Shown here: piece by piece, positions 27,366 through 27,780 of the stretch
Layout: the number at the start of each line of letters is the position of its first letter
How positions within the stretch are numbered: position 1 is the stretch's first letter
Origin: Magallana gigas
Lineage: Eukaryota
Reading direction: 5' to 3'
Length of the DNA: 64,000 nucleotides
NCBI RefSeq assembly: GCF_963853765.1
Contig: NC_088854.1
Span: 48,980,001-49,044,000, forward strand
Position numbers and translations under genes: made by a program
The notes under the pieces: model-generated
What the model saw: the letters and a program-made list of their open reading frames with translations, nothing else
What the model was told of the DNA's origin: nothing
Databases searched by the model: none

Positions 27366-27500
27366 NNNNNNNNNNNNNNNNNNNNNNNNNNNNNNNNNNN
27401 NNNNNNNNNNNNNNNNNNNNNNNNNNNNNNNNNNNNNNNNNNNNNNNNNNNNNNNNNNNNNNNNNNNNNNNNNNNNNNNNNNNNNNNNNNNNNNNNNNNN
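27366..27500. other. Assembly gap (135 N)
   Basis: Run of N. Confidence 1.
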
Positions 27501-27559
27501 ATATCACACAGTATAAATAATCAAAAAAGAAAAAGAAAATGAACAGTTCCAAAGTTTCT

Positions 27560-27602
27560 ATTCACTAGCGCTTTCTGGATTTACATCCTTCTTCAGGTGA
27601 AT
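27560..27602 (-). ncRNA. Mirror copy of the hammerhead motif on the minus strand
   Basis: Exact reverse complement of 27627-27669. Confidence 0.7.
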
Positions 27603-27626
27603 GTACATAAGTTATGACTTATGTAC

Positions 27627-27669
27627 ATTCACCTGAAGAAGGATGTAAATCCAGAAAGCGCTAGTGAAT
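27627..27669 (+). ncRNA. Minimal type I hammerhead ribozyme motif (Penelope-like element type)
   Basis: Stem I ATTCAC/GTGAAT; core CTGAAGA; stem II GGAT-GTAA-ATCC with an extra A on each side; GAA; palindromic stem III AGCGCT; CUA triplet with predicted cut at 27663/27664. Confidence 0.7.
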
Positions 27670-27707
27670 AGAAACTTTGGAACTGTTCATTTTCTTTTTC
27701 TTTTTTG

Positions 27708-27709
<2 letters not shown>

Positions 27710-27777
<68 letters not shown>
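27710..27777. repeat. (TA)n microsatellite
   Basis: Read directly. Confidence 0.97.

Positions 27778-27780
<3 letters not shown>

What the first reader, a model, noticed from the sequence alone, without database searches (positions are those of the whole stretch)
27517..27712. Perfect palindrome carrying two mirror-image minimal hammerhead ribozymes
The 96-bp perfect arms each contain a full minimal type I hammerhead: ATTCAC-CTGAAGA-A-GGAT(GTAA)ATCC-A-GAA-AGCGCT-A-GTGAAT. The stem III is tiny and palindromic, as known for Penelope-like element ribozymes that act as dimers. There are atypical extra As on both sides of stem II. Inverted truncated pLTRs are a known Penelope insertion footprint, and the structure abuts a (TA)n tract. 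A read-through transcript would form a long dsRNA stem competing with the ribozyme fold. It lies 16 bp from an assembly gap, so a fold-back artefact is possible.
Basis: partly seen in the sequence, partly recalled or inferred. Interest (0 to 1): 0.7.

Follow-up and report, generated by a model that had tools for sequence, protein, structure and literature searches.

The report
Head-to-head Penelope retroelement ends with hammerheads
The palindrome is two very short, mirror-image end pieces of a young Penelope-like retrotransposon inserted in a TA repeat, each carrying that element class's usual minimal hammerhead ribozyme motif; this is a known insertion footprint and most likely not an assembly error.

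Summary
In detail: window 27517-27612 and 27617-27712 are perfect 96-nt inverted arms around a 4-nt centre.

What it is:
- Each arm is the last ~100 nt of a multi-copy retroelement (at least 199 copies in this 564-Mb genome).

Why it looks like a real insertion, not a fold-back artefact:
- The locus has the published PLE footprint: two 5'-truncated copies head to head, a (TA)n target, and a ~40-nt "tail" on one side only.
- The 16 nt between the palindrome and the N run are the start of that tail.
- Twelve other head-to-head loci have a one-sided tail, with varied centres.
- Public short-read contigs could not confirm this particular locus.

The hammerhead:
- The 43-nt motif has the full catalytic core.
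- At least five PLE families here keep the same core (585 pattern matches, 0 in the control) while stems I and II covary.
- The extra A 5' of stem II is typical of PLE hammerheads. The extra A 3' of it is not, but one other family has a U there.
- Cleavage is untested. Copy 5' ends cluster upstream of stem I and at the predicted scissile bond (manual count), which hints at cleavage in vivo.

It is a new member of a known kind.

The parts
27501..27516 (-). First 16 nt of the PLE 'tail' extension, attached to the left arm and cut off by the N run
   Evidence: The reverse complement of 27501-27516 equals the first 16 nt of the 40-nt tail found after the 3' end of other copies.
27517..27617 (-). 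Left arm: the 3'-terminal ~101 nt of the PLE, in reverse orientation. Its 5' end is at TCATAAC, 5 nt longer than the right arm.
   Evidence: 100% identical to other copies. Compared with long copies.
27560..27602 (-). Minimal type I hammerhead motif of the left arm. Predicted cleavage is between 27566 and 27565 on the - strand.
   Evidence: Mirror of 27627-27669.
27613..27616 (.). 4-nt centre (TATG). The junction GTACATAAGTTATGACTTATGTAC is unique in the genome.
   Evidence: Pattern search of the whole genome: 1 match, at this locus.
27617..27712 (+). Right arm: the 3'-terminal 96 nt of the PLE, ending ...CTTTTTTGATTAT with no tail
   Evidence: It has the same orientation as the RT/GIY-YIG ORF in long copies, about 210 nt after the stop codon.
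27627..27669 (+). Minimal type I hammerhead motif. Stem I: 27627-32 with 27664-69. Core CUGAAGA: 27633-39. Bulged A: 27640. Stem II: 27641-44 with 27649-52, loop GUAA. Extra A: 27653. GAA: 27654-56. Palindromic stem III AGCGCU: 27657-62. A17: 27663. Predicted cut: 27663/27664.
27710..27778 (.). (TA)n microsatellite, the insertion target
   Evidence: Most other copies of this and sister families also abut (TA)n. (TA)n is a published PLE target.

Best explanation
The palindrome is a compound insertion of a young Penelope-like retroelement (RT plus C-terminal GIY-YIG endonuclease, with a CxxxxCxxC motif before the endonuclease as in the Neptune/Nematis clades) into a (TA)n microsatellite. Two copies of the element's 3' end, each cut down to about 100 nt, lie 5' end to 5' end. 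The left copy carries the optional ~40-nt tail; the right one does not.

Shown here:
- the origin of the arms;
- the head-to-head build and the one-sided tail, also at other loci;
- the TA target;
- a conserved hammerhead motif whose stems covary.

Inferred:
- The element's protein cut both strands of the TA target and primed reverse transcription on both, as shown in vitro for an Anolis PLE.
- One cDNA started at the inner RT start site (...GATTAT) and the other at the outer one (end of the tail).
- Each cDNA ran to the 5' end of a short RNA that begins 11-14 nt upstream of hammerhead stem I, most likely the transcription start in the pseudo-LTR.
- The two cDNA ends were joined with 0-5 nt of microhomology, which gives a perfect inverted repeat.

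The hammerhead in each arm belongs to the PLE minimal class. Its 2-bp stem III cannot hold as a monomer, but two copies pair through the palindrome AGCGCU into a 6-bp stem III. In the element's life cycle it would cut the transcript between A17 and G1.1. At this locus the two copies are passive passengers. A read-through transcript would fold into a 96-bp hairpin, not into ribozymes.
For: - The arm is multi-copy: 54 scored matches at >=96% identity and 199 copies of a 16-nt anchor.
- Long copies have RVT_1 (E 1.7e-9) and GIY-YIG (E 3e-8) on the same strand as the motif.
- All five composite copies fetched in full (L031-L035) are (-)arm ... (+)arm with the tail at one end only. 12 of 12 short head-to-head loci also have a one-sided tail.
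- Every close same-family pair I saw is head to head; none is tail to tail.
- Centres differ between loci and this one is unique, so these are separate events and not copies of an assembly error.
- Literature: an inverted 5'-truncated copy, a tail at one end, (TA)n targets and a hammerhead in the pseudo-LTR; the PLE protein cleaves and extends both strands, and two internal RT start sites bracket the tail.
- Hammerhead: the pattern CTGANGA-N(9-22)-GAAAGCGCTH has 585 genome matches against 0 for the reversed control, in at least five families.
- Stem I: 6 of 6 pairs have compensatory changes, 91% of cells are paired against 19-37% when slid, and 0 of 500 shuffles reach the score.
- Stem II changes from GGAU/AUCC to GCC/GGC to GCCC/GGGC while G10.1-C11.1 is kept.
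- The dimer cofold forms the 6-bp stem III: -23.9 kcal/mol against 2 x -6.9.
- Copy 5' ends cluster at 27606-27620 (56 of 163 arms) and at the predicted cut +-2 nt (16 arms, 14 loci; about 3.2 per nt against about 0.5 per nt in the core). This is from my manual reading. A smaller replicate in family C agrees.
Against: - No public contig that I could see bridges the centre of this locus, so its reality rests on analogy and on the asymmetric flanks.
- The N run hides the rest of the left flank.
- Rfam reports no hammerhead at E <= 10. It also misses sister families with canonical junctions, so this says little.
- The extra A between C11.1 and G12 lies next to the general base G12 and might impair catalysis.
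- In the 96-nt arm the minimum-energy fold is not the hammerhead.
- The few RNA reads laid (20) cross the cut site uncleaved.
- PLE minimal hammerheads cleave poorly in vitro. In Anolis the ribozyme was not needed for insertion in vitro, and no RNA ends at the cut site were found.
- The 5'-end histogram was read by eye, not by script, and microhomology blurs positions by +-2 nt.
Confidence: 0.88

Rival explanations
1. Assembly fold-back artefact: a chimeric long read or a mis-join next to a gap made one arm into a palindrome.
For: The palindrome is perfect and lies 16 nt from an N run. No listed contig from three public DNA runs spans the centre.
Against: - A fold-back would mirror the flanks as well. 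Here the arms stop exactly at the element's 3' terminus on both sides, with tail on the left and (TA)n on the right.
- Twelve other loci on other chromosomes have the same build with a one-sided tail, and PLE literature describes it.
- My inference: contigs built from 31-letter words cannot cross a perfect palindrome of a multi-copy repeat, so the blank is expected.
Confidence: 0.06
2. The motif is hammerhead-shaped and conserved but is not mainly a self-cleaving ribozyme here. It may serve as an RNA dimerisation element or a protein-binding/RT-positioning element of the PLE, and the variant with an extra A 3' of stem II may be catalytically dead.
For: - There is an extra nucleotide between C11.1 and G12 in families A and B.
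- The RNA reads cross the site uncut.
- In vitro activity of PLE minimal hammerheads is low, cleavage depends on protein, and it was dispensable for insertion in Anolis.
- The motif always sits about 45-60 nt upstream of the RT start site, where a positioning element would be expected.
Against: - All core residues are kept across at least five families while the stems covary. That pattern fits selection for catalysis, not only for pairing.
- There is an excess of copy 5' ends at the predicted scissile bond in family A (manual reading). A few arms in family C also start at or within 2 nt of it.
Confidence: 0.3
3. A non-autonomous DNA transposon (MITE or foldback element) with long terminal inverted repeats that inserts at TA.
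For: Perfect inverted arms, TA-rich flanks, many short copies.
Against: - The arm is the 3' UTR end of an RT/GIY-YIG retroelement.
- Solo single arms are common, the inner ends of arms vary widely, and the outer ends carry a one-sided tail.
- None of this fits cut-and-paste terminal inverted repeats.
Confidence: 0.02
4. A hairpin RNA gene (microRNA or endogenous siRNA precursor).
For: Rfam microRNA models align at 54 bits or less. The hairpin energy is -159.7 kcal/mol.
Against: All scores are far below the gathering thresholds (84-211 bits), and several unrelated microRNA families match, which is what any long perfect hairpin gives. The origin as a PLE fragment explains the sequence fully. A by-product role as a small-RNA source is not excluded.
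Confidence: 0.03

Closest known systems
Minimal type I hammerhead ribozymes of Penelope-like elements (Cervera & de la Pena 2014; Lunse, Weinberg & Breaker 2017)
   Same: - Full core CUGANGA...GAA, A15.1-U16.1 and H17.
- Stem I of 6 bp with no loop.
- G10.1-C11.1, and an unpaired nucleotide between A9 and G10.1.
- A tiny palindromic stem III that implies action as a dimer.
- Location in the repeat at the element's end, many dispersed truncated copies, and pairs on opposite strands about 100 bp apart.
   Different: - One extra A between C11.1 and G12. Family B here has a U at that place; families C and D have none.
- Stem II is only 4 bp, against the 7-8 bp described for Schistosoma and 6 bp for D. 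virilis PLE hammerheads.
- Activity was not tested.
- The Lunse paper could not be read here.
Canonical EN+ Penelope-like elements: compound inverted insertions with a one-sided tail (Evgen'ev & Arkhipova 2005; Arkhipova 2006; Craig et al. 2021)
   Same: RT plus C-terminal GIY-YIG, heavy 5' truncation, an inverted 5'-truncated copy upstream, a 30-40-bp tail at one end only, and a (TA)n insertion bias.
   Different: Here both copies are truncated to about 100 nt, so nothing but the two hammerhead-bearing ends is left. In the paper read here, the (TA)n bias is stated for Naiads, which lack canonical hammerheads. This family has a C-terminal endonuclease and a hammerhead.
Poseidon element of Anolis carolinensis (PAc; Frangieh et al. 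2024)
   Same: The hammerhead lies a short distance upstream of two internal RT start sites whose interval is the tail. The target is AT-rich. Both DNA strands are cleaved and extended, which offers a mechanism for head-to-head copies.
   Different: - In PAc the ORF starts inside the hammerhead; here the motif lies about 210 nt after the stop codon of the preceding ORF.
- The cut-to-RT-start distance is 49 nt (89 nt with tail) against about 85-92 nt.
- Nothing was tested biochemically here.
Animal non-LTR retrozymes
   Same: Short non-coding units with type I hammerheads related to PLE pseudo-LTRs.
   Different: Retrozymes are direct tandem repeats that give circular RNAs. This is an inverted pair, which cannot give a unit-length circle by double cleavage of one strand.

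Membership tests
Hammerhead ribozyme (type I, PLE minimal class) | Conserved core C3 U4 G5 A6 N7 G8 A9 ... G12 A13 A14, the A15.1-U16.1 pair, and a non-G at position 17 | tested here: met
   CUGAAGA at 27633-39, GAA at 27654-56, A27657 pairing with U27662, A27663. The core is invariant in 13 aligned members of five families.
Hammerhead ribozyme (type I, PLE minimal class) | Stems I and II supported by covariation | tested here: met
   Stem I: 6 of 6 pairs compensatory, 91% paired against 19-37% when slid, 0 of 500 shuffles. Stem II: GGAU/AUCC, GCC/GGC and GCCC/GGGC by inspection. MAFFT did not align stem II in register, so it was not counted by tool.
Hammerhead ribozyme (type I, PLE minimal class) | Short stem III with a palindromic sequence that allows a dimer | tested here: met
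   AGCGCU is its own reverse complement. The cofold of two 43-mers forms the 6-bp intermolecular helix, -23.9 against 2 x -6.9 kcal/mol.
Hammerhead ribozyme (type I, PLE minimal class) | G10.1-C11.1 and an unpaired nucleotide between A9 and G10.1 (Cervera 2014) | tested here: met
   A27640, G27641-C27652.
Hammerhead ribozyme (type I, PLE minimal class) | C11.1 directly followed by G12 | tested here: not met
   A27653 is inserted. Family B has a U at the same place; families C and D have none. The effect is unknown.
Hammerhead ribozyme (type I, PLE minimal class) | Match to a curated Rfam hammerhead model | tested here: not met
   No hammerhead family at E <= 10. The control is also blank for sister families C and D, which lack the extra nucleotides, so the test is uninformative for this class.
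Hammerhead ribozyme (type I, PLE minimal class) | Site-specific self-cleavage after position 17 | not testable with these tools
   Only indirect evidence: an excess of copy 5' ends within +-2 nt of the predicted bond (manual reading). The 20 RNA reads show no ends there.
Penelope-like element (canonical EN+) | One ORF with a reverse transcriptase followed by a C-terminal GIY-YIG endonuclease | tested here: met
   RVT_1 and GIY-YIG in L031 and L032 ORFs. The RT match in the 410-aa ORF alone is below the Pfam cut-off, but the 309-aa RT ORF passes (38.1 against 29.6 bits).
Penelope-like element (canonical EN+) | Compound insertions: an inverted and/or tandem 5'-truncated copy (pseudo-LTR) and a 30-40-bp tail at one end | tested here: met
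   (5 of 5 composite copies and 12 of 12 short pairs have a one-sided tail). Direct pairs are also seen.
Penelope-like element (canonical EN+) | Phylogenetic placement of the RT within PLEs, next to telomerase RT | not tested
   No tree was built. The CGDSRCGTC motif before GIY-YIG fits the CX2-5CxxC motif of Neptune/Nematis described.
MicroRNA precursor (Rfam mir-3688 and others) | Score at or above the family's gathering threshold | tested here: not met
   54 bits against 84 needed. Several unrelated families match the same hairpin. No hit at gathering thresholds in the whole window.

The most novel reading that the evidence does not exclude
The copies of this oyster PLE family may record the 5' ends of the RNAs that were reverse transcribed. 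One class begins 11-14 nt upstream of the hammerhead, a candidate transcription start. A second class begins at the hammerhead's predicted scissile bond.

If that second class is real, it would be genomic evidence that a PLE minimal hammerhead cleaves in vivo and that cleaved RNA is used as template. That has not been shown for PLEs; the Anolis study found no such RNA ends.

A further possibility is that the palindromic stem III pairs the two RNAs of a dimeric RT/EN complex. That would tie ribozyme dimerisation to the head-to-head insertions.
Probability: 0.3. Interest if true: 0.55.

Novelty: new member of a known kind. Interest (0 to 1): 0.3.

Why it matters
For this locus, little: it is a dead fragment of a known kind of retroelement, probably in non-coding DNA.

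For the field, the genome offers a clean natural data set:
- several young PLE families share one hammerhead core but have different stems;
- they have three kinds of stem II/core junction;
- there are hundreds of near-identical copies whose 5' ends can be mapped to the nucleotide.

That makes two open questions about PLEs testable. Do their weak minimal hammerheads cleave in vivo? How do the inverted, one-tailed insertions arise?

For genome annotation, such perfect palindromes next to TA repeats should be masked as PLE fragments, not called as microRNA hairpins or assembly errors.

Tried and rejected
- **Rfam at gathering and at E <= 10.** No hammerhead hit for this family, nor for sister families with canonical junctions, so the blank is uninformative. 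The microRNA hits are generic hairpin matches.
- **Public reads.** Three DNA runs are held only as short contigs and none of the listed pieces bridges the centre. The one raw RNA run gave 20 reads, too few to see ends.
- **Scripted histogram of truncation points.** 27 R-first rows were never listed.
- **Lunse et al. 2017.** Not held.
- **Protein Atlas.** It only confirmed metazoan RT/GIY-YIG clusters; no clade name.
- **MITE and microRNA readings.** Considered and rejected (see rivals).
- **Stem II covariation by tool.** MAFFT put the families out of register because of the bulged nucleotides, so only stem I was counted.
- **The N stretch.** I do not reproduce or use them, and I left L020 and L021 out of later scripts.

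Full report
**1. The observation**

The sequence and the repeat finder confirm a palindrome. The arms 27517-27612 and 27617-27712 are perfectly complementary, around a 4-nt centre (TATG). With one mismatch the symmetry runs on to 27512/27717.

The 31-nt heart of the proposed ribozyme occurs exactly twice in the window, once per arm, with none expected by chance. N runs from 27367 to 27500 and a (TA)n tract follows the right arm to about 27778.

**2. What the arm is**

A search of the window's own genome (564 Mb, 29 contigs; window = C2:48980001-49044000) with one arm gave 54 scored matches at 96-100% identity on many chromosomes. A 16-nt anchor from the arm occurs 199 times.

Several matches come as a (-) copy and a (+) copy 1.3-4 kb apart. 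The DNA between them (L031-L035) has ORFs with the YLDD reverse-transcriptase motif and a GIY-YIG endonuclease at the C-terminal end. Pfam confirms RVT_1 (E 1.7e-9) and GIY-YIG (E 3e-8).

The arm has the same orientation as the ORF and begins about 210 nt after its stop codon. It is therefore the 3' end of a canonical endonuclease-bearing Penelope-like element (PLE). The motif CGDSRCGTC before the endonuclease fits the CX2-5CxxC motif that Craig et al. 2021 give for the Neptune and Nematis clades. I built no tree.

The public runs that hold this stretch are labelled oyster or mollusc metagenomes.

**3. The build of the insertion**

All copies end ...CTTTTTTGATTAT. After that comes either (TA)n or a 40-nt extension (TTATACTGTG...GGATTAT) and then (TA)n.

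- In the five long composite copies, an inverted 5'-truncated copy precedes the main copy, and the extension sits at exactly one of the two outer ends.
- In the window, the 16 letters between the N run and the left arm are the reverse complement of the first 16 letters of that extension. The right arm goes straight into (TA)n. The window's palindrome therefore has the same one-sided build.
- All close same-family pairs that I saw are head to head; none is tail to tail.

This matches the published description of PLE insertions: heavy 5' truncation, an inverted 5'-truncated copy next to the upstream end, a 30-40-bp tail often at one end only, and (TA)n targets (Craig et al. 2021).

Frangieh et al. 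2024 showed in vitro that a PLE protein cleaves and extends both strands of an AT-rich target. They also showed that reverse transcription starts at two internal sites whose interval is the tail. The window's palindrome is the extreme case in which both copies are only about 100 nt long.

**4. Artefact or not**

A fold-back error would mirror whatever lies beyond the arm. Here the symmetry stops exactly at the element's terminus on both sides, and the flanks differ (tail against TA repeat). The centre junction is unique in the genome. Other loci have other centres: a 5-nt TTATG/CATAA microhomology at eight or more loci, and spacers of 4-25 nt at others.

I tried to confirm the locus with public data. 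The three DNA runs are kept only as short contigs, and no listed piece bridges the centre. I read this as uninformative. Contigs built from 31-letter words should not be able to cross a perfect palindrome made of a multi-copy repeat (my inference). I put the artefact reading at about 6%.

**5. The hammerhead**

The motif has every core residue. It has a 6-bp stem I, a 4-bp stem II with G10.1-C11.1 and a GUAA loop, A15.1-U16.1 and A17. Its stem III, AGCGCU, can form only 2 bp within one molecule but is palindromic.

- Folding: two 43-mers fold together into the dimer with a 6-bp stem III (-23.9 kcal/mol against 2 x -6.9).
- Genome-wide pattern: CTGANGA-N(9-22)-GAAAGCGCTH has 585 matches and none for the reversed control. 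The matches fall into at least five families.
- Sister families: flanks fetched for 20 of them show that each sits about 45-60 nt before an element 3' end that abuts (TA)n or a tail.
- Stem I differs between families but always pairs: ATTCAC/GTGAAT, ACTGT/ACAGT, AATCCA/TGGATT, ATCTA/TAGAT, ATAGCTT/AAGCTAT.
- Counted on an alignment of 13 members, all six stem I pairs have compensatory changes. 91% of cells pair against 19-37% when the partner is slid, and no shuffle of 500 reaches the score.
- Stem II also changes (GGAU/AUCC, GCC/GGC, GCCC/GGGC) while the G-C next to the core is kept.

This is the pattern Cervera & de la Pena 2014 used to argue that PLE minimal hammerheads are real. They list the nucleotide between A9 and G10.1, G10.1-C11.1 and the palindromic 15.2-16.2 as conserved features. 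The A at 27640 is therefore typical. The A at 27653, between C11.1 and G12, is not in their consensus. Family B has a U there and families C and D have nothing.

Rfam finds no hammerhead here at E <= 10. It also finds none in families C and D, so its models simply do not reach this minimal class.

**6. Does it cleave?**

This cannot be tested here. Known PLE minimal hammerheads cleave poorly in vitro and only as dimers. The Anolis one needs the element's protein and was dispensable for insertion in vitro. The 20 RNA reads laid on the stretch run through the site uncut, continuing into the element's 3' UTR on one side and into the tail on the other. That shows transcription of the family but is far too thin to show ends.

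One indirect signal is new. I read the 172 listed copies of family A by eye and placed the 5' end of each arm. After counting segmental duplicates once, 163 arms remained.

| Position of the arm's 5' end (window-equivalent) | Arms |
|---|---|
| At or before 27605 (long copies) | 38 |
| 27606-27620, mostly at CATAAC/AACTTATG, 11-14 nt before stem I | 56 |
| 27621-27632 | 14 |
| 27633-27661, the ribozyme core | 14 |
| 27662-27666, the predicted cut +-2 nt | 16 (14 loci) |
| At or after 27667 | 25 |

The density at the cut (about 3.2 per nt) is several times that on either side (about 0.5 and 0.9 per nt).

In family C (57 copies), ends again cluster 8-13 nt before stem I. Two loci have an arm that starts exactly at the first base after the predicted cut, and two more start 2 nt later.

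The reading was manual, microhomology blurs positions, and the numbers are small. It is a lead, not a result.

If it holds, the first cluster would be the 5' end of the transcript. PLE transcription is known to start in the pseudo-LTR, and long copies have a perfect TGACGTCA about 40 nt upstream. The second cluster would be the 5' end left by self-cleavage. Both arms of the window's palindrome end in the first cluster.

**7. Mechanism**

Shown:
- PLE origin of the arms;
- the head-to-head arrangement and the one-sided tail;
- the TA target;
- a conserved hammerhead with covarying stems.

Inferred from Frangieh et al. and the copy structure:
- both strands of the TA target were cut and used as primers;
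- one cDNA started at the inner start site and the other at the outer one;
- both ran to the 5' end of a ~100-140-nt RNA;
- the ends were joined with a 1-nt overlap.

A snap-back of a single cDNA is an alternative for the second arm. It explains the recurrent TTATG centre well, but it does not by itself explain the one-sided tail.

**8. Comparison and verdict**

This is a member of two known kinds: a PLE compound insertion and the PLE minimal hammerhead class. One junction feature departs from the published consensus. I found no paper in the held library on oyster PLE hammerheads, so I file it as a new member of a known kind.

Interest is modest for the locus itself. The genome-wide pattern of 5' ends is the part worth following.

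The N stretch was not filled. Letters for it appeared once, unasked, in the flank printed for the window's own locus. They are neither used nor repeated here.

Noticed in passing
G000 genome-wide; examples L036-L051: At least five distinct hammerhead-bearing PLE families share the same core and stem III (CUGAAGA...GAAAGCGCU) but have different stems I and II and three kinds of stem II/core junction. This makes a natural series for testing what the bulged nucleotides do.
   Followed up: partly
L049-L051 (C1:8164668, C1:3917483, C2:33720183): In family E, stem II is replaced by an A/U stretch that is itself palindromic in some copies (AUUUUAAAAU). Both stem II and stem III could then form between molecules. 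Stem I is irregular in two of the three copies.
   Followed up: no
C1:15571856, C3:29309545, C6:6513587, C8:39661094 and others: Eight or more loci share the same palindrome centre (...GTACATAAGTTATGTAC...). Four of them have the same pair of unlike arms: ACGTTC on the tail side and ACATTC on the other. This is either recurrent microhomology-guided formation or re-mobilisation of a palindromic unit.
   Followed up: partly
L040 (C2:20562572-20562793); L004:1889-1931; L009:1777-1818; C1:59692374/59693928: Ends of different PLE families lie within 0.2-1.5 kb of each other in or next to the same TA tracts, so (TA)n microsatellites act as nests for several PLE families.
   Followed up: no
Long copies, about 40 nt upstream of the equivalent of window 27613: A perfect palindromic TGACGTCA (CRE-like site) precedes the main cluster of copy 5' ends. 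It is a candidate promoter element of the pseudo-LTR.
   Followed up: no
C8:46956125-47076726 (six copies); C4:27703782-27736742 (three copies): Identical truncated insertions with identical flanks recur at 5-47 kb spacing. These are segmental or tandem duplications that carry a PLE fragment, not separate insertions.
   Followed up: no
window 27602 (and its mirror): Public runs show T or C here at roughly equal depth. This matches two subfamily variants (ACATTC and ACGTTC) seen among genomic copies, not a polymorphism of this locus.
   Followed up: partly
I did not read or use the letters.
   Followed up: no
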